Part shown: one piece after another, positions 46,913-55,900 of the stretch
How the letters are laid out: each line of letters starts with the position of its first letter
Position numbering within the stretch: position 1 is the stretch's first letter
Assembly: GCA_907165135.1 (NCBI GenBank)
Contig: OU015569.1
Location: 12,462,001 to 12,526,000 of the forward strand
Length of the DNA stretch: 64,000 bases
From: Oikopleura dioica
Taxonomy: Eukaryota > Animalia > Chordata
Direction of reading: 5' to 3'
Notes under the pieces: generated by a model
Told to the model about the DNA's origin: nothing
Databases searched by the model: none
What the model saw: only the letters and a program-made list of their open reading frames with translations
Program-made: the position numbers and the translations under genes

Positions 46913-49900
46913 TCAATCATTTTTACAGTCGTCGCCAGTTTCGGAAGTGCATTCTGGGTCGCCTTCGATAATATTGTCGAGCTTCATTTTTTTCATCAAA
47001 TCGTTGAAATTCGACGGATTGAAGTCGGCTTTTATTATCTCCAGATCCGCGAAGCCGTCCGATGCTGATTTCGGCGGGAGATCTTTCTTCAATTCTAAAA
47101 GACAAAAAAAATAAAACAAATTATCTTGTCTCTCTTTTTACCGCGGAGCTTATCCTTATTTTCCTTCTTTTTAATTTGATCCAGCGTATCGAGGACGATT
47201 TTCGGCGTTTCTTCCCGCAACAGTGGCTGATAATCGGTGTAAAAGTGGCATAAATCGTGACTGTAGCTGAAGTGATCGGCCAGAGTCAATTTCAAATTCC
47301 CGCAGCTGAAGTCAGTCACTGTCAAATTTCCGTCAGAGATCTTGAGAGGATCTTCGTACTAGAATCGAATGATAAGAGAGAAGCGACCCGCAGTTTACGA
47401 GATGACACCCTTATTTCTTTTAATAATCTTCAATTTCTCAGCAAATCTGATTTCAGAAATAAGATTATGACATTCGCCTACTTTTCAAAACAAACAAAAA
47501 TAAGGGTATCACTGAGATAAAGCCTCAATCTTCAATCTTAAAATATAAAATAAGGATTTCATTATGCTATGTAGTAGTTTTACACTTATATAAAAACAAA
47601 AATTCTCTCTTGTTAAAGCGCCAAGCTGAAATACAAATCCGTCCGCGTGAAATATTCACCCGCGCGCACGAACGCTCTCGCCGCCGCGACGAGTACACTC
47701 ACCGCCACTACAGCGCAAGTCACTCTACCCAGCACAGACTGCTAATTCAACTCAAACTACAAGTTACTCATCTCCATCTACACATAGCCCGCCAAAGAAT
47801 ACTTTTTATTCACCCTTACTTACAACTCGTTCGCGTGAACTAAAGCTCTATTCACGCGAACACAAGCACTATATAAGTAACCTGCTTCTGCCTTACACAA
47901 CACACAACACGACACACTTTTATAAACTTCTAAAAACACCAATACACTTTTTATCAAGCTCACACCAACCGCCTTGTAGTTTTTATATGCATAAAACCAC
48001 TACAAATGGTGACTGAGTCTTGAAACGAACCAAACTCCCCGAAGAATAAAAACAAACACCGCCGAGAGATTCTTACTAGAGAGCTGCTGCCTTTACACAG
48101 AGGGAAGATCCTGTTTCACAATGAAAATCATAGATAAGGAAAGAGCTAGAAAACTCATCGAAGAGCAATGGGTTCCACTTACCCTTGATGCAGAGATGAT
48201 CGATGCAAATCTCAAAACTGAGCTCAGCGAGCTTGTAAAAAGATCCAAGTCTTGTCAAACAAACGGACCGAAATCCGTTGCGTCGACTTGGCACTGAAAA
48301 AGCGATCTTTATTTTCAAAAATCCATTGGTTGACTTTCTTTCCATGAATGAAACGCAGCAAAATGCAAATTCAGAAGAAGCGAAAAACTTCCTCGAATCT
48401 GAAAATGATGGATTGATTTTCGCAATTGAAAGAGTAAGATCAGCTAGTGGAATGACAGTGAAAAAGGAGGAGCCTCGACAAAATCAAACTGCACCCGAAA
48501 GCAACCAAACAATTTCAGAAGTGAGCAAGCTCGTTGATGCTGGAAAAATCTCAATGAACGAGCTGGAAGTTCTCCTTACAGCCTTTCGCGAACAAAATGC
48601 TCAGGATGATCGCGCGCAGAAGGAAGAGCTAGTTGAACCTAAGCCTCAACTTAGTGAAAACGAACTCACTGCTGACATCCTAAACATCCAGAAACTTGTT
48701 GACACGGGAAAAGTTTCTCCTGCAGAAATTCGACTTCTTGTTGGTGCCTTCCGAGAGCCAGATATCCGAATATCAAGTGTTCCTGAATCAAGAAAAGGTG
48801 TCACTAAGAAAACTTCGAAGTCCACTCCAATTAAAACACCAAATGTGAAGGTCAAAAGCCCGAAATTCGATTCAAGCCTTCCTGTTTCAGCATGGATTCG
48901 CAATATGGAAATCTACGGCCGAGTTTCTAATTTGGATGACGAGTCTCTTATCACAGTAGCTCTAAGCAGTTTGCTTTCCGAAGAGGAGGGAAGTCACATA
49001 ATAGAATCCCTCACTAACGAAGAACTCTGCGACTGGAACTCCTTCAAAATGAGACTTCTTGAAACATTGGGAAAGACACGTGATCACTACAAGCACGAAT
49101 TCGAGAACTACATGCGTGGCAGTGATTCTTTTGGAGTTTGCATGGCGAAGCTGTCCTCATACTACAAGCAAGGATATGATGTAACAGAGCTTCGACGAAC
49201 AGATGAAGAACTATTGATTTCACGTTTCTGTCGAGCACAAGATGACAAACTGCAAGAGCTCCTCTTACGCGAAAAGGGATCACTCAACATGCAGAGCATA
49301 GTACGTCGAGCAAACGAACTTCAACGCAGTCTTCCAAAGGAGAAAGAAGTCAACTTTGCAATTCCTCAAGTTGCACTTCATGAGAATCTTGAGAAGAAAA
49401 TCGAAAGCCTGACTGAAATTGTGCAAAAGATGATAAAAGCGGATTCTGACCGTAAGAAAAAGAATCAACCAGCAAAGAAACGTCCATCAATTGATCAGGA
49501 GAAAACCCAAGGTTACTGCATGAAATTTTTGAGAGATCAAAAATGCTCATATGGAACAAAATGCAAGTACATTCATGACCTTGAAAACGCGCCTGCTTCG
49601 GTTCAAGAATACGCGAAAAACTTATGACTAGGTCAAACAGAACTGTCATGTCCGAATTATCTTACTTGCCCGAAAAATCTCAAATTTATCAACGTGAAAA
49701 TCAACGATCTTACCTACCCTGCTCTCGTGGACACAGCGTGTTCTCGAACATGTATAAACTCGTCTTTACCGTTTATTGGAAAAACAACAAAATCAACGCT
49801 TCAAGTCTACTGCGCAAACAACCAGATCATAACTCCTGATGTTCTTTCAACGCCGCTCTTTATGCAAATAAATAGTCAGGATGGTCCACTAATTCTGAGA

Positions 49901-52900
49901 ACAAAGCCGCTTATCATCAAAAATCTCTGTTGCCCAATCATTCTTGGACTGGACCAGCTTCATGATCTACAAATCAGTGCAGATAACGATTTCATTCTCA
50001 TCAATCAAAAAAGAATCAAGACTGTATATCCAAATCTCAACGAAAAAACAAAAGTTAATGTCAGTGCAATTGTAGAAATTGACGATGACGACAAAAACGA
50101 AAAAAAATCATTAAAAAAATTTCAAAAAATTCGAAGTCAAAAAGCCGCTCAAATCAACTTCAAACCGGAGATTGGCTCTTACGGACAGACTACCGAAGAA
50201 CAAAAACAAAAACTTTTCGCGCTTAATTGTAAATATCGCCTTTCATATTCTATGGGTGATACTGATCTCGGTAAAATCCATGGATATCGATTCTCAATGC
50301 CTTTCCATGATGAGCAAGCAACAACTCATCAACCACCGCGCCCTATCGCAATTCATCTGCAACCAGTAGTTGATTCACAATTCGAAGTTTGGAAATCACT
50401 CGATGTAATTGGAGAAACGCAATCACCGAATAACGTGCCCCTACTGGTACTCAAAAAGGCCGATGGTACTTTTAGAGTCTCTGCTGATGCAAGAAACCTT
50501 AACAACCTTCTTATCAAAGACAGATATCCACTTCCAGCTATGCAGCAAATTTTCTACGAGATTGGAAAACGCCTATCTAACGAAAACTCGTGCTTTATAT
50601 CAAATTTCGACTTGCACCGAGGTTACTGGCAACTACAAACACTTGAAAAAGATCGACCGAAATTGGCCTTCTCTCATAATAATAAACACTACGCAGCGCA
50701 TAGAATGCTTTATGGAGTAGCAACCGGTCCAGCTGCATTTTCAAGATGTATGGCCAAAATCCTTGAGCACAGGAGTATATTGATCTATATTGACGATATC
50801 ATCGCAGTGGATAACACTTTCGAAGAGCATTACAAAACAATCGAATTCATTCTAAAAAGCTGTCAAGAGCACGGAATGCTGCTCTCGCCAAAAAAGGTCT
50901 TCATGTGTAAATCAGAACTCAACTTTCTTGGACATACGATTTCAAAAGATGGTATTCGACCCACCGAAAAACACTTGGAAGTCATCAAAAATCTCAAACC
51001 ACCGCAAAGCCGAAACGAAATCAAGCGATTGCTCGGTACAATAAACTTCAACCTCAAATTCGTGAAGGATGGCTCAGCAATTCTACAACCACTTTATGAG
51101 CTGACATCGAAAAACAGGGAATTCAAGTGGGAAGAAAAACATGAATCAGCATTCGAAACGATAAAGAAACTTTTGCTTGAACGACCATGCTTAGCTCACT
51201 ATAAAGAAGGATCAGAACTGATTCTCGTAACTGACAGCTCTGGATCAAAAATTGGTGGCTGCTTGTATCAAAAAGAAGATGATCAACTGCATCCGATCGG
51301 ATATTTCTCGAAAGCCCTTACAGGACCTGATCTGAGACGAAGCATGCGAGAAAAGGAACTTTTCGCACTGGGATTATCAATCAGCTTCTTCGAATTCTAC
51401 TTGTTGAATACGACCTTTACCGCTGTAGTAGATCATAAAAGCCTACTATTCTTATTCAAAGAGCAAGGAGAACTAAAGAAAAATGATATTAAGAAGATGA
51501 ATATCCTGAATTATCTTCTGCGCTTTGATTTCCGAATTCTACACTTTGATGGAAATTCACCGATCATGGCAACTGCTGACTGGCTAAGTCGTCTTCCTGA
51601 ATACAAAAGCACTGAACTCGAAAAAGATGCTGAAACCTTCGATGGAATCCCAAATACTGTCCTGCTGCTTCATACAGTTGTCCCAGATAGCAAAAAGGAA
51701 GTCTTGCTTACGTTCAGCGATAGAATATTCGACGAAAAACAAATAAACGAGCTGCAAATGAAGTGCAAATTAACACGTAACCTGTTCGAAAAAGCAAGAC
51801 GAAACTCAAAATCAAACTTTCAAATCAAGAAGAATGTCCTTTACAAAGATAATCGCCTGGTATTGCCTAACAATCTAAGCGACGAATTTTTGCAGTATTT
51901 ACACTGTATCACCGGACACTGTGGATCAAAGCAACTGAACATTCTTTGCAGAAAGTTCTACATCCACCAAATTCAAAAGAAAACAAGTCAGCTTACTCGA
52001 TTCTGCCCGACATGTATCCAGATAAAGCCAATGCCAAAGCTAAAACCATCAATGATTGAAAATCGCCGATTCGCAGAAACTCCATTTTCAAAAACGCATT
52101 TTGACCTTGTTGATTACAACAGGCCCGATGCCAATGGAAAAAGATACCTTCTAACAGCCATGGATTCATTAACTGGATTTCTGGATGGTATACCCTTAAC
52201 TCGTAAGACTGATGAAGTTGTTGCAAAACAACTCCTCAATCTAATACTCACACACGGCATAACTGGTGATGCAATTACAGACAACGGAGCCGAGCTAAAT
52301 GGACCACTTGTCACAGAAATCTTCAAACGTTTTGAAATCCGTCATACGACAACTACAGCTTATCGAAGCCAAAGTAATGGTCAACTCGAACGAGTTCACC
52401 GGGAAATACACATGAAGCTTAAAAGCTTGAATGCTTCAAATAAAAACTGGTCCTCAGCGTGGCCAATGAGCAAATACTTTGTCAACAATCTTCCAAAAAG
52501 AAATCTTGATGGACTTAGCGCAAATGAAGCCTACTATGGAAGAAGTTTTCACCCACCATTCCAGACAAATTTCGACGCAAAAGGCCATGGAAAACCTTGG
52601 ATAAAATCAATTGAAAACTACTTCCGAGAACTTCACCCTTCGATTCTAGCGCACCAAATTGCAAAGCACCGCAAACTTTTCGCCGCCGACAAAAACAGCT
52701 GCCCTACCCTTAAAATTGGTCAAAAATGTATGATCTGGAAACCTGCTCTAGGCAAACTCAGCAGAGTTTGGCACGGTCCTTATACGATTCATAAACGAAT
52801 TGCAAAGGATTCCTACATTGTGAAAAACGTGCATACAGGACGCGAATACAGAAGACACATAAATCTGATTCGGCCCTGCAAAATAATACAGCTGGACAAA

Positions 52901-55900
52901 AGCGACTATAATCAAAACGAGAGTATGAAAACCGACAAAGCAGAATCAACCGATGTAAAAATGTCAACCGTGACACAAACAGAAAACGATGATCTTCCAG
53001 CGAAAGAATCAATCAAACAAACGCAAAATTGTTTTGATAAGATTTTGTCAACCGAGACAATAATCGACAAAAATGAAAATTCTTGGTCAAACCGACTTCG
53101 ACCGAGAAAGCAAATCTGAATATAAAGGGGGAGGAAGGGCCTCAACAACCCTTTTTGTAAAATCCACTTTCAAGCAAGAATAAGTGGTTGCCAAAGATGA
53201 AAGACCATAGGACGTCCGACTTGCCAAATTATCCAACTGTAGCTCATGAAGAAGGGACCTTCAACAAACAATGCAAATTCGTCAAAACCCTTTTGGATAA
53301 CTCAATAAAACAAGTCAAATGTGGCCAGTCTTCGACTTTACCGCTGTTGCTGAATATACAGTTATTCAATTGGCCAAACGAATTTCTGTCATATCTGCGA
53401 AAATGTAACTGCCGAGCACGACTGTGGAAAACAAAATTGCTAGAATTCCAATTGGCATTAACAATTTGTGATAACGAAGAAAATTTCAGCGAAATCTTCA
53501 AATACAAAACATCGAAATAAAATCCGCGAAACGAAATCAAAACCGGGAAGGAAAAACCGAAAGCAAACAGATGAGCGCAGCGCAGCTCGTAAATCATAAG
53601 GGAGTAGCCATTGTGAAAGCGTCGAGCGAGGAGCACACACACCGAACCTCTCCCGTCGTTACGTCCCAACAGCAAAACCCTGACGGGGAAACCCCCCCTT
53701 CAAAATGTACCGACGAAAATTCAGAAAATGGAAAAACGTCAGCTTTTATTTAAAATATTTCAAAAAAAAAAGAGCTTATAACGAAGAAAAATGTCCGGCA
53801 GCCGATTTGGCATAATTGAAAATATACCGTATTTGCAAAGAGAAGACCCTAAACGAAGATATATTCAATTCTCACTTTCCTTCATCATTGGATTCAAAGT
53901 TAACCTTCATTGCCTCCGGAATGAACCCAAAACGCGCATTTTACGAGAGTATCTCATCAAAATTGAGGAAGCCCTGCTGAAGGTTGCCCAGAACAGAGAA
54001 TTCACTTTTCTAGCGAGCAATCTACAAGTCCAAGGAGCCACTACGATTGAAGCCCTCCTCAACTGGTCTTATAAAGCACTCATCCTACGATTCTCTAACA
54101 TAAATGAAGAGCAATCGAGAACGGAGATTATCAAGTCTTTCGAGACCGAATTCTATGGAAAAAGATCTCTGTGGAGCGCAATGGCGAATATCACTCCTTC
54201 GGAATTATCATCAATGACAACGAGAGCAGAAATCGTCTGCTATGACTATCTCAACTCATTGAATATTGGGAATTTCAAGCTTTGCGTTGCTCAAGGACCA
54301 ATGCTTACAAACTCGACTTCTGAACAACAAAATAGGAATGCAGAGGAAGTTCAATCGACCTCAACCGCTTGTACCCGCGTAGACAACGTTTACTTCGACC
54401 AAGATCAACTCGACGATCAGTGGATAAATTTTATAGATGGAAACAACCTGAACGATCCGACTCCTGGCTTCACATCTGCATTCGAACAAAAAGCCAGGTC
54501 CAATCAGATGAATGATTTTCCAAAACGAGGATGTTTCTAAAAAGGAGGAGGAATATGTAGTAGTTTTACACTTATATAAAAACAAAAATTCTCTCTTGTT
54601 AAAGCGCCAAGCTGAAATACAAATCCGTCCGCGTGAAATATTCACCCGCGCGCACGAACGCTCTCGCCGCCGCGACGAGTACACTCACCGCCACTACAGC
54701 GCAAGTCACTCTACCCAGCACAGACTGCTAATTCAACTCAAACTACAAGTTACTCATCTCCATCTACACATAGCCCGCCAAAGAATACTTTTTATTCACC
54801 CTTACTTACAACTCGTTCGCGTGAACTAAAGCTCTATTCACGCGAACACAAGCACTATATAAGTAACCTGCTTCTGCCTTACACAACACACAACACGACA
54901 CACTTTTATAAACTTCTAAAAACACCAATACACTTTTTATCAAGCTCACACCAACCGCCTTGTAGTTTTTATATGCATAAAACCACTACAGCTATCTCCC
55001 AGCAAAAATAAAACCTTTAAAAACAAGATAAAGGCCAAAACTAATTTTGAATATCAAAAAATAAGGGGGTAGCTATGCTGACTCAAGGAGAAAATACGTA
55101 TATATCATACCACGAGTGAAATAATATTAGTCCGCATGTAGACGCCGACAATTGCAATCCAAAACGCGCATTTCGTCTGTCGATAATCCTTCTTCGTCCT
55201 TTTCGTTTGAAAGACCTTGCCGATAAAGTACGAGCCGAGAAGTAATGAGGTAATAATGAGTTCTGATTTTTCCGTGGCCCAGTGAACGCGGCCCTCGCAA
55301 TCGCACTTGGGCCGGCCATCTTCTCGGTGGCTCTTTCCTTCGGCGAGGAATTGGAAGGAAACAAAGTTGCCAAAGAAGAGGTTGCTGCCAGTCAACTTTC
55401 CGCAAAACGCTGCCTCATCGTCTGGCACGCCTGATGCTACACACATGGGCGAGAATATCACTCCCAAAAGGTCCAGTGCGTCCAGTTCCGGGAGATTCAG
55501 TTTCTCGCCAACGAGCTCGTAGAAAAAGTCGAAGAGACTCTTTAAATGGGTCTTAAAAATTTTCAGACTGTCATTATTGAAATTCGGGCTTTCGATTTAT
55601 CTAACCGAGAATATAGACTTTTGATTGGCTCATCCAAAAATTCCTCAATTTTATTGGCTGAAATGCGTTTCTTATTGGTTCAAAAAGAAATTTCGCGACC
55701 CTTTCTTGAAAAGCTCCAGCGTCGGAATTGTGCATAAAATCAACCCTGAAAGTCTCAAACAAGACGAAATAGCTCCACAAGCGCCGTCTAATAGTTCTTC
55801 AATCACTGGCTTTGGCGAAGATCTGGACTTGATTTTCCCTGGAAGATCAAGTCGCCGATTCTCTGGCAAGACGAAGTTGTTTATCAGCAGGTGGATGAAG

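What the first reader, a model, noticed from the sequence alone, without database searches (positions are those of the whole stretch)
49622..49696. gag-pol joined by UGA-CUAG stop-codon readthrough
Gag ends TTA TGA (49625-49627). It is followed in the same frame by CTA GGT CAA ... with no further stop into the protease (NVKINDLTYPALVDTA); pol has no ATG of its own upstream of the protease. UGA CUA G is an established leaky readthrough context (alphavirus UGA-CUA; mammalian AQP4/OPRL1/MDH1/LDHB UGA-CUAG). Most Ty3/gypsy elements use frameshifting or a single ORF. In an element with identical LTRs a chance nonsense mutation is less likely than a programmed signal.
Basis: partly seen in the sequence, partly recalled or inferred. 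Interest (0 to 1): 0.75.

Follow-up and report, generated by a model that had tools for sequence, protein, structure and literature searches.

The report
Leaky stop joins gag and pol
An intact retrovirus-like mobile element of the tunicate Oikopleura separates its coat gene (gag) from its enzyme gene (pol) by one in-frame UGA stop followed by CUA, a known "leaky" context kept across the whole element family, so the enzymes are most likely made by occasional readthrough of the stop, a known strategy seen here in a new host group.

Summary
Gag ends TTA TGA at 49625-49627. The same frame continues CTA GGT and stays open for 1163 codons through protease, RT, RNase H and integrase. The first in-frame Met lies 44 residues past the protease Asp. 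The LTRs are 437/437 identical.

This is not a quirk of one copy. In 21 diverged lineages in this genome (Oikopleura dioica OKI2018_I69; Pol N-terminal identity down to about 23%) the junction is always an in-frame TGA followed by CTA (20 lineages) or CTT (1), while flanking bases are nearly random. A Norwegian O. dioica scaffold and marine-metagenome relatives show the same layout (TGA CTA, TGA CTT, or TGA CAA T).

The conserved signal is UGA-CUA, not UGA-CUAG. The next base is G in only 9 of 21 lineages.

Codons on both sides of the stop are under purifying selection. The pol terminators of the same elements use mixed stops and contexts. No downstream RNA structure, SECIS or Rfam element was found.

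This matches the Beier-Grimm type II readthrough context (Sindbis and O'nyong-nyong viruses). It closely parallels the fission-yeast Ty3/gypsy elements Tj1, Tcry1 and Tosmo (GAA TGA CT). It is therefore a new member of a known kind.

Readthrough itself is inferred, not measured. The scan's notes held no earlier report of this.

The parts
47566..47569 (+). Target-site duplication GCTA, left copy (right copy at 54991-54994)
   Evidence: GCTA immediately precedes TGTAG... of the 5' LTR and immediately follows ...CTACA of the 3' LTR.
47568..48004 (+). 5' LTR (437 nt identical stretch; TG..CA ends from 47570)
   Evidence: 100% identical to 54554-54990.
48007..48019 (+). Putative primer-binding site beginning TGG, 2 nt after the LTR (inferred; primer tRNA not identified)
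   Evidence: flank sequence. One search found no tRNA gene in the window to compare.
48344..49627 (+). gag ORF, from the first ATG to the TGA stop
   Evidence: The only Pfam match is the C-terminal CCCH finger. Its identity as gag rests on position and on the zinc finger.
49517..49576 (+). CCCH zinc finger (C-x8-C-x5-C-x3-H) in Gag, 36 codons before the stop
   Evidence: PF00642 at 23.6 bits against a cutoff of 20.5; conserved at this position in all lineages of the main clade.
49625..49630 (+). Proposed readthrough signal: in-frame UGA plus CUA (this copy continues with G at 49631)
   Evidence: The six positions carry 2.0, 2.0, 2.0, 2.0, 2.0 and 1.72 bits across 21 lineages, against 0-0.9 bits in the flanks. 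CTA makes up only 10.9% of Leu codons in these ORFs (binomial 1e-18).
49628..53119 (+). pol frame (1163 codons plus TGA stop), with no AUG before the protease
49730..49732 (+). Protease catalytic Asp codon (VDTA motif, residue 35 after the stop)
   Evidence: The motif was recognised by eye; there was no Pfam protease hit for this copy.
50453..50941 (+). Reverse transcriptase domain
   Evidence: PF00078, E 5e-20, residues 276-438.
51128..51469 (+). RNase H domain
   Evidence: PF17919 and PF17917, residues 501-614.
51866..52369 (+). Integrase zinc-binding domain and catalytic core
   Evidence: PF17921 (residues 747-801) and PF00665 (residues 819-914). Both are below the curated cutoff but have E values of 8e-5 and 5e-6.
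53120..54538 (+). Post-pol region with ORFs of unknown function (e.g. 53791-54540, 249 aa); no env-like family match
   Evidence: no Pfam hit. This region is the subject of another note of the scan.
54539..54553 (+). Polypurine tract directly upstream of the 3' LTR
   Evidence: flank sequence (a purine run ending in ggaggaggaa).
54554..54990 (+). 3' LTR

Best explanation
The element is a structurally complete Tor-type Ty3/gypsy LTR retrotransposon of Oikopleura dioica. Its genomic RNA is translated from the gag AUG. Most ribosomes terminate at the UGA at 49625-49627 and yield Gag. A minority decode the UGA with a near-cognate tRNA, because the stop sits in the leaky UGA-CUA context (Beier-Grimm type II). 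Those ribosomes continue in frame to give a Gag-Pol fusion, and the protease then releases PR, RT/RNase H and IN from it. The signal appears to be the hexanucleotide alone, with no 3' stimulatory structure. Shown here: the anatomy, the family-wide conservation of the hexamer, coding constraint on both sides of the stop, and the contrast with pol terminators. Inferred: that readthrough actually occurs, its efficiency (by analogy a few per cent), and the inserted residue (Trp, Arg or Cys by analogy).
For: (1) Same-frame gag-TGA-pol with no AUG before the protease.
(2) In 25 of the first 30 pol-bearing loci the pol frame is preceded by an in-frame TGA. Most of these keep a gag-length open frame (427-496 aa) in the same frame. 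Distant clades at 23-29% Pol identity show the same.
(3) Across 21 lineages TGACTA is invariant apart from one CTT, while flanking positions carry 0-0.9 bits. CTA is a minor Leu codon at 10.9%; P is about 1e-18 under independence.
(4) UGA-CUA occurs on both sides of the deepest split of the Pol tree, whose branches are about 2.8 changes per site apart.
(5) pS exceeds pN on both sides: 0.55 vs 0.23 in the first 30 codons after the stop and 0.67 vs 0.24 in the last 30 of gag. Codon +1 shows no change at all.
(6) Internal control: in the same 22 elements the pol terminators are TAA 9, TGA 9, TAG 4, with +4 C in 3 and none TGACTA. Gag stops are TGA-C in 22 of 22 (Fisher 2e-5 and 2e-9).
(7) A Norwegian O. 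dioica scaffold has CTA TGA CTA AAC. Metagenome relatives have TGA CTA, TGA CTT, or TGA CAA T, the last resembling the type I CAA-UYA context.
(8) Literature: UGA CUA is the type II context of Sindbis, O'nyong-nyong and PSIV (PMC13517186). The same junction is known in fission-yeast Ty3/gypsy elements, and the stop is essential in Tj1 (PMC10085805).
Against: There is no direct evidence of translation through the stop: no ribosome profiling, no junction peptide, no reporter assay. The Tca2 precedent shows that an in-frame UGA with a plausible signal need not work by simple readthrough (PMC2194720). No stimulatory 3' structure was found, so efficiency could be low. The G of CUAG, which raises efficiency in mammalian reporters, is not conserved. 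The lineages are related, so the binomial and Fisher values overstate independence.
Confidence: 0.8

Rival explanations
1. Pol is made from a separate, internally initiated or reinitiated translation product (internal promoter, IRES, non-AUG start or termination-reinitiation). The UGA simply ends gag.
For: Tor elements are known to use internal promoters for env (PMC4402516). The Tca2 junction showed promoter activity in reporters.
Against: No conserved in-frame AUG lies between the stop and the protease Asp in any lineage. Coding constraint starts right after the stop. Reinitiation would not explain selection for UGA specifically (never UAA or UAG) or for CUA at +4 to +6.
Confidence: 0.08
2. 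The stop is removed from a fraction of transcripts by splicing of a small in-frame intron, giving a fused gag-pol mRNA.
For: Oikopleura has very short introns. Tor env mRNAs can use non-canonical splice donors.
Against: Only the six bases TGACTA are conserved; no donor or acceptor motif is conserved around them. Codons -20 to +20 all show pS above pN, so no stretch long enough for an intron is free of coding constraint. Indels between lineages after the stop are in multiples of three.
Confidence: 0.05
3. The hexamer is conserved for another reason (a protease cleavage site, or an RNA or DNA cis-element), and the stop is bypassed by some other recoding event such as hopping or selenocysteine insertion.
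For: Leu at +1 could be part of a cleavage site. The function of the hexamer was not tested.
Against: Codon-level conservation (CTA rather than any Leu codon) is not explained by a protein-level need. One clade replaces Leu with Gln (CAA) yet keeps TGA-C. No SECIS or other Rfam family occurs in the element. The hexamer equals a published leaky context.
Confidence: 0.04
4. The stop is a chance nonsense mutation in a dead copy.
For: None beyond the prior that many genomic copies are defective.
Against: Identical LTRs, an intact 1163-codon pol, and the same stop in all other lineages.
Confidence: 0.01

Closest known systems
Fission-yeast Ty3/gypsy retrotransposons Tj1, Tcry1, Tosmo1-3 (Jia et al. 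2023, PMC10085805; Guo et al. 2015 as cited there)
   Same: They are Ty3/gypsy elements with gag and pol in one frame. The two genes are separated by TGA followed by CT(A/G). The arrangement is interpreted as context-driven readthrough, and in Tj1 the stop is essential for transposition.
   Different: They belong to the fungal Tf1/sushi group. Their conserved block is the 8-mer GAA TGA CT, whereas in Tor the codon before the stop varies (TTA, TTG, CTT, GAG, GCA, GAA, AAA, CAT, CAA...). The Tor host is a chordate, and Tor Gag carries a CCCH finger.
Alphavirus opal readthrough, Beier-Grimm type II (Sindbis UAC UGA CUA ACC; O'nyong-nyong UUA UGA CUA GAC; also PSIV UGA CUA UGU), review PMC13517186
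   Same: The hexamer UGA CUA is identical, and the -1 codon UUA of O'nyong-nyong virus is the same as in the window copy. The logic is also shared: a minor extended product carries the polymerase.
   Different: These are RNA viruses, and the listed examples usually carry an extended 3' stem-loop starting at +9 to +16. None is predicted in Tor.
Cellular UGA-CUAG readthrough genes (OPRL1, AQP4, MDH1, LDHB; Loughran 2014 and Stiebler 2014 as cited in PMC10085805)
   Same: Readthrough is driven by short context alone. The window copy and 8 further lineages have the full UGA CUAG, and three lineages have UGA CUA GGC, the OPRL1-type motif mentioned in PMC13517186.
   Different: In Tor the G at +7 is not conserved (9 of 21 lineages). 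The product is a retroelement polyprotein, not a C-terminal extension.
Gammaretrovirus (MuLV) gag-pol readthrough, type III
   Same: An in-frame stop between gag and pol sets the Gag to Gag-Pol ratio.
   Different: MuLV uses UAG, a purine-rich spacer and an H-type pseudoknot at +12. Tor uses UGA and shows no structure.
Candida albicans Tca2 (Ty1/copia), PMC2194720
   Same: An in-frame UGA between gag and pol.
   Different: Tca2 belongs to the copia superfamily and has a predicted pseudoknot. Its bypass mechanism remained unresolved experimentally, which is a caution for Tor.

Membership tests
Programmed stop-codon readthrough, type II context (UGA-CUA or UGA-CGG) | In-frame UGA between two coding regions | tested here: met
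   for the window; for relatives.
Programmed stop-codon readthrough, type II context (UGA-CUA or UGA-CGG) | CUA (or CGG) immediately 3' of the stop, conserved at nucleotide level | tested here: met
   20 of 21 lineages have CTA and 1 has CTT; not explained by codon usage.
Programmed stop-codon readthrough, type II context (UGA-CUA or UGA-CGG) | Downstream frame shows a protein-coding signature from the first codons after the stop | tested here: met
   pS 0.55 vs pN 0.23 in codons +1 to +30, and pS above pN in every 4- or 5-codon bin.
Programmed stop-codon readthrough, type II context (UGA-CUA or UGA-CGG) | Extended product demonstrated (reporter, ribosome profiling or peptide) | not testable with these tools
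   No expression or proteomic data were available.
Programmed stop-codon readthrough, type II context (UGA-CUA or UGA-CGG) | Extended 3' stem-loop (frequent in viral type II cases, not obligatory) | tested here: not met
   the downstream 90 and 180 nt fold more weakly than control windows (mean z +1.3 and +1.1); z +0.91. RNAalifold predicts 0 pairs in 13 lineages.
MuLV-type (type III) readthrough | UAG, an 8-nt purine-rich spacer and a pseudoknot | tested here: not met
   The stop is UGA in all lineages, and no structure was found.
-1 programmed ribosomal frameshifting | pol in the -1 frame, overlapping gag, with an X XXY YYZ heptamer | tested here: not met
   The window and all intact Tor lineages have pol in frame 0. 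By contrast another gypsy-like family in the same genome has T TTA AAC or A AAA AAC just before its gag stop.
Selenocysteine recoding of UGA | SECIS element in the transcript | tested here: not met
   no Rfam match at E<=1 in 47500-55050 on either strand.
Ty3/gypsy (Metaviridae-type) LTR retrotransposon | LTRs, target duplication, and domain order PR-RT-RH-IN | tested here: met
   LTRs, TG..CA ends, 4-bp duplication; RT, RNase H and integrase in that order; the protease motif was seen by eye.
Tor family of Oikopleura dioica (Volff 2004; Henriet 2015) | Ty3/gypsy-like Pol restricted to Oikopleura, grouping with the named Tor1-4 references | tested here: inconclusive
Relatives were found only in O. 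dioica and marine metagenomes. No named Tor reference sequences were available, so the subgroup (Tor1-4) was not assigned.

The most novel reading that the evidence does not exclude
Tor elements may be an independent, ancient and family-wide adoption of structure-free UGA-CUA readthrough in a chordate retroelement lineage. The signal is kept across more than 2.8 amino-acid changes per Pol site. One marine clade switches to UGA-CAA-U (type I-like) and three lineages drift to CUU. This would be a natural comparative 'mutagenesis' series of leaky stop contexts, and it appears undescribed in the literature that could be read here.
Probability: 0.55. Interest if true: 0.5.

Novelty: new member of a known kind. 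Interest (0 to 1): 0.42.

Why it matters
The result gives the expression strategy for pol in the only abundant LTR-element family of a model chordate with an extremely compact genome. It shows that a six-base context alone has been kept by selection for a very long time. It also offers about 30 natural variants of the context (different -1 codons, different +7 to +9 bases, and CUU and CAA-U variants) for testing what makes UGA leaky in a non-vertebrate chordate. For annotation, gag and pol of Tor elements should be modelled as one readthrough unit. They should not be modelled as two genes or joined by invented introns.

Tried and rejected
- Downstream stimulatory structure was sought four ways and not found: 90-nt and 180-nt MFE against native control windows, a dinucleotide-shuffle z-score for the window, and RNAalifold on 13 lineages.
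- An Rfam scan of the whole element gave nothing, so no SECIS, frameshift or readthrough element is present.
- The TAG-ending subfamily (L005-7, L011, L015, L020) first looked like a -1 frameshift variant. It has no slippery heptamer, a -1-frame stop lies 9 nt upstream, and its pol carries several further frame breaks. It is better read as degraded copies whose hexamer is disrupted by an apparent 4-nt gap.
- L004 has frame breaks on both sides of the stop and is likewise degraded.
- Literature: Volff et al. 2004 (the original Tor description) and Gao et al. 2003 (gag-pol recoding survey) are not held, so I could not check whether the Tor in-frame stop was already reported. Henriet 2015 does not mention it. 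A full-text search for Oikopleura + retrotransposon + readthrough found nothing.
- The scan's own notes searched by words were blank.
- Stop-context usage in host genes was not examined because no annotation was available.
- No gag-pol joined protein was submitted to any tool; the pieces were searched apart.

Full report
**What is at the coordinates**

One search shows gag ending ...AAA AAC TTA TGA, with TGA at 49625-49627, followed by CTA GGT CAA ACA. The gag open frame (48278-49627, first ATG at 48344) and the pol open frame share one reading frame.

Translated apart, the upstream piece is a 449-residue Gag-like protein. Its only family match is a C-terminal C-x8-C-x5-C-x3-H zinc finger. The downstream piece is open for 1163 codons. 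It contains the protease motif ALVDTA, RT (PF00078), RNase H (PF17919/PF17917) and integrase (PF17921, PF00665), in the Ty3/gypsy order.

The first in-frame Met after the stop is residue 79. The protease Asp is residue 35. An AUG-initiated Pol would therefore lack the active site.

The element is structurally complete:
- Two 437-nt LTRs that are 100% identical (47568-48004 and 54554-54990).
- TG..CA termini from 47570.
- A 4-bp target duplication, GCTA.
- A TGG-initiated primer-binding-like site 2 nt after the 5' LTR.
- A polypurine tract abutting the 3' LTR.

**Host and family**

I checked this partly. A homologue, P0006, carries the source name Oidioi.mRNA.OKI2018_I69.YSR... [Oikopleura dioica], and it sits on a contig of 2,916,375 bases, exactly the length of contig C3 of this assembly. 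The element therefore belongs to the Ty3/gypsy-like 'Tor' elements described for O. dioica (PMC4402516). I could not assign a Tor subgroup because no named reference sequences were available.

**The comparative test**

A DNA search of the genome found six diverged copies at 67-77% identity. A protein search with the Pol N-terminus found 96 matches. I examined 30 fetched loci and then 18 more from distant hits.

In 25 of the first 30 loci the pol frame is bounded upstream by TGA. Most of these keep a gag-length open frame (427-496 residues) in the same frame. The following codon is CTA in every case but one. The post-stop sequences seen are CTA GGT, GGA, AGA, AGT, GAC, TGC, TCA, GCT and GAA, and once CTT CTA.

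Clades with only 23-29% identity to the window's Pol N-terminus show the same pattern (TGA CTA GGC, TGA CTA GAA, TGA CTA TTT).

After collapsing to 21 lineages (below 90% identity around the junction), the per-position picture is as follows:
- Positions +1 to +5 are invariant.
- Position +6 is A in 20 of 21.
- The flanks carry 0-0.9 bits.
- Position +7 is G 9, T 8, A 3, C 1, so the conserved unit is UGA-CUA, not UGA-CUAG.
- The base before the stop is A in 15 of 21.

CTA supplies only 10.9% of Leu codons in these ORFs. Twenty of 21 by chance would be about 1e-18 if the lineages were independent. They are not fully independent. However, synonymous sites around the stop differ at pS 0.43-0.87 between the pairs compared, so inheritance alone cannot explain the conservation.

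On a Pol tree the hexamer lies on both sides of the deepest split, whose branches sum to about 2.8 changes per site.

**Outside this assembly**

A scaffold of the Norwegian O. dioica reference (GCA_000209535.1, FN653029.1) has CTA TGA CTA AAC in frame. Eight marine-metagenome contigs carry Tor-like elements at 38-51% Pol identity. All have gag and pol in one frame separated by TGA. The next bases are:
- CTA in L058 and L060.
- CTT in L056, L057 and L059.
- CAA T in L061-L063.

 CAA followed by pyrimidines recalls the type I context (TMV UAG CAA UUA; PMC13517186). In every lineage the stop is UGA and the next base is C.

**Is the downstream frame translated from the stop onward?**

- Codons +1 to +30: pooled pS 0.55 against pN 0.23.
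- Last 30 codons of gag: pooled pS 0.67 against pN 0.24.
- In 4- or 5-codon bins from -20 to +20, pS exceeds pN everywhere, and codon +1 shows no change of either kind.
- Both alternative frames contain stops in every pair compared.

This leaves no room for an intron spanning the stop. It also argues against a start well downstream.

**Internal control**

In 22 elements with a complete pol, the pol terminator is TAA in 9, TGA in 9 and TAG in 4. It is followed by C in only 3, and it is never TGACTA. The gag stop is TGA-C in 22 of 22 (Fisher 2e-5 and 2e-9). UGA is therefore an ordinary terminator in this organism, and the gag stop is specifically the leaky kind.

**No helper structure**

- The 90 nt and 180 nt after the stop fold more weakly than control windows of the same loci (mean z +1.3 and +1.1; 18 of 20 lineages positive at 180 nt).
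- The window's junction has z +0.91 against dinucleotide shuffles.
- RNAalifold predicts no pair in 13 lineages.
- Rfam finds nothing in the element, including no SECIS.

The signal looks like bare context, as in the cellular UGA-CUAG genes. It does not resemble MuLV (UAG plus pseudoknot) or most alphaviruses (extended stem-loop).

**Exceptions**

- L033 has TGG in place of TGA, in a copy that carries other stops.
- One subfamily of degraded copies on C3 ends gag in TAG with pol in the -1 frame. It has no slippery heptamer, and the hexamer is interrupted by an apparent 4-nt gap relative to the other lineages.
- L035 and L004 are also degraded (L004).

None of these weakens the pattern among intact copies.

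**Mechanism and confidence**

Programmed, context-driven readthrough of the gag UGA, producing a minor Gag-Pol fusion, is the best-supported reading (0.8).

Rivals are internal initiation or reinitiation (0.08), splicing (0.05), another role for the hexamer with some other bypass (0.04), and a chance mutation (0.01). The Tca2 case, in which an in-frame UGA did not behave as simple readthrough in reporters (PMC2194720), is the main reason for caution.

**Comparison with known systems and novelty**

UGA-CUA is the Beier-Grimm type II context. It is found in Sindbis virus, in O'nyong-nyong virus (UUA UGA CUA GAC, almost the window's sequence) and in PSIV (PMC13517186).

Among LTR retrotransposons, in-frame stops are known in Tca2, SIRE1, Skipper (cited as Leng et al. 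1998 in PMC10085805) and candidate rice gypsy elements. The closest parallels are the fission-yeast Ty3/gypsy elements Tj1, Tcry1 and Tosmo1-3. They share a conserved GAA TGA CT(A/G) junction, and the stop is essential in Tj1 (PMC10085805).

The Tor case is therefore a new member of a known kind. I could not read Volff et al. 2004, which may already mention the in-frame stop.

Interest is moderate. The mechanism is familiar. What is new is the depth of conservation, the absence of structure, and the natural series of context variants in a chordate host.

**Constraints observed**

Gag and pol were always searched as separate pieces. No copy is singled out for revival.

Noticed in passing
window 49517-49576, and the same position in L009-L063: Gag carries a C-x8-C-x5-C-x3-H (CCCH, tristetraprolin-type) zinc finger about 36 codons before the stop, instead of the usual retroviral CCHC knuckle. 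It is conserved in every lineage of the main Tor clade and in the metagenome relatives. It is absent from the deep clade (L038-L040, L054).
   Followed up: partly
L044 (G000:C4:64678-68600), L045 (C13), L047 (C13); further hits at C4:27-84 kb, C5:56 kb, C5:16.14 Mb, C3:2.887 Mb, C12: A second gypsy-like family (27-30% RT identity to Tor) lies almost entirely within about 100 kb of contig ends or on small contigs. It has pol in the -1 frame, with classical slippery heptamers (T TTA AAC or A AAA AAC) directly before the gag stop. The same genome thus hosts one frameshifting and one readthrough LTR family. The end-of-contig location may indicate a subtelomeric niche.
   Followed up: partly
G000 contig C3 (2,916,375 bases; named YSR in a source protein name): 51 of the 96 Pol matches lie on this one 2.9-Mb contig, apparently the Y-specific region. 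Most of the degraded copies are there too. Tor copies seem to pile up there.
   Followed up: no
L061, L062, L063 (marine metagenome contigs): A Tor-like clade replaces CUA with CAA U(C/U)N after the UGA. This resembles the type I (TMV-like) leaky context, which suggests a switch between two classical readthrough contexts within one element family.
   Followed up: partly
90-180 nt downstream of the gag stop in 20 lineages (e.g. window 49628-49807): This stretch is predicted to be less structured than the rest of the element at equal G+C (mean z +1.1 to +1.3). Whether low structure is itself selected is unknown.
   Followed up: partly
L033:1477 (oriented), G000:C3:736339-740655: One degraded copy has TGG (Trp) where all others have TGA. 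Trp is one of the residues expected to be inserted at a leaky UGA.
   Followed up: no
window 53120-54553: A 1.4-kb post-pol region holds ORFs (110 aa; 249 aa at 53791-54540) with no Pfam match. This copy has no recognisable env, whereas the metagenome relatives carry a 560-650-residue third ORF overlapping the end of pol.
   Followed up: no
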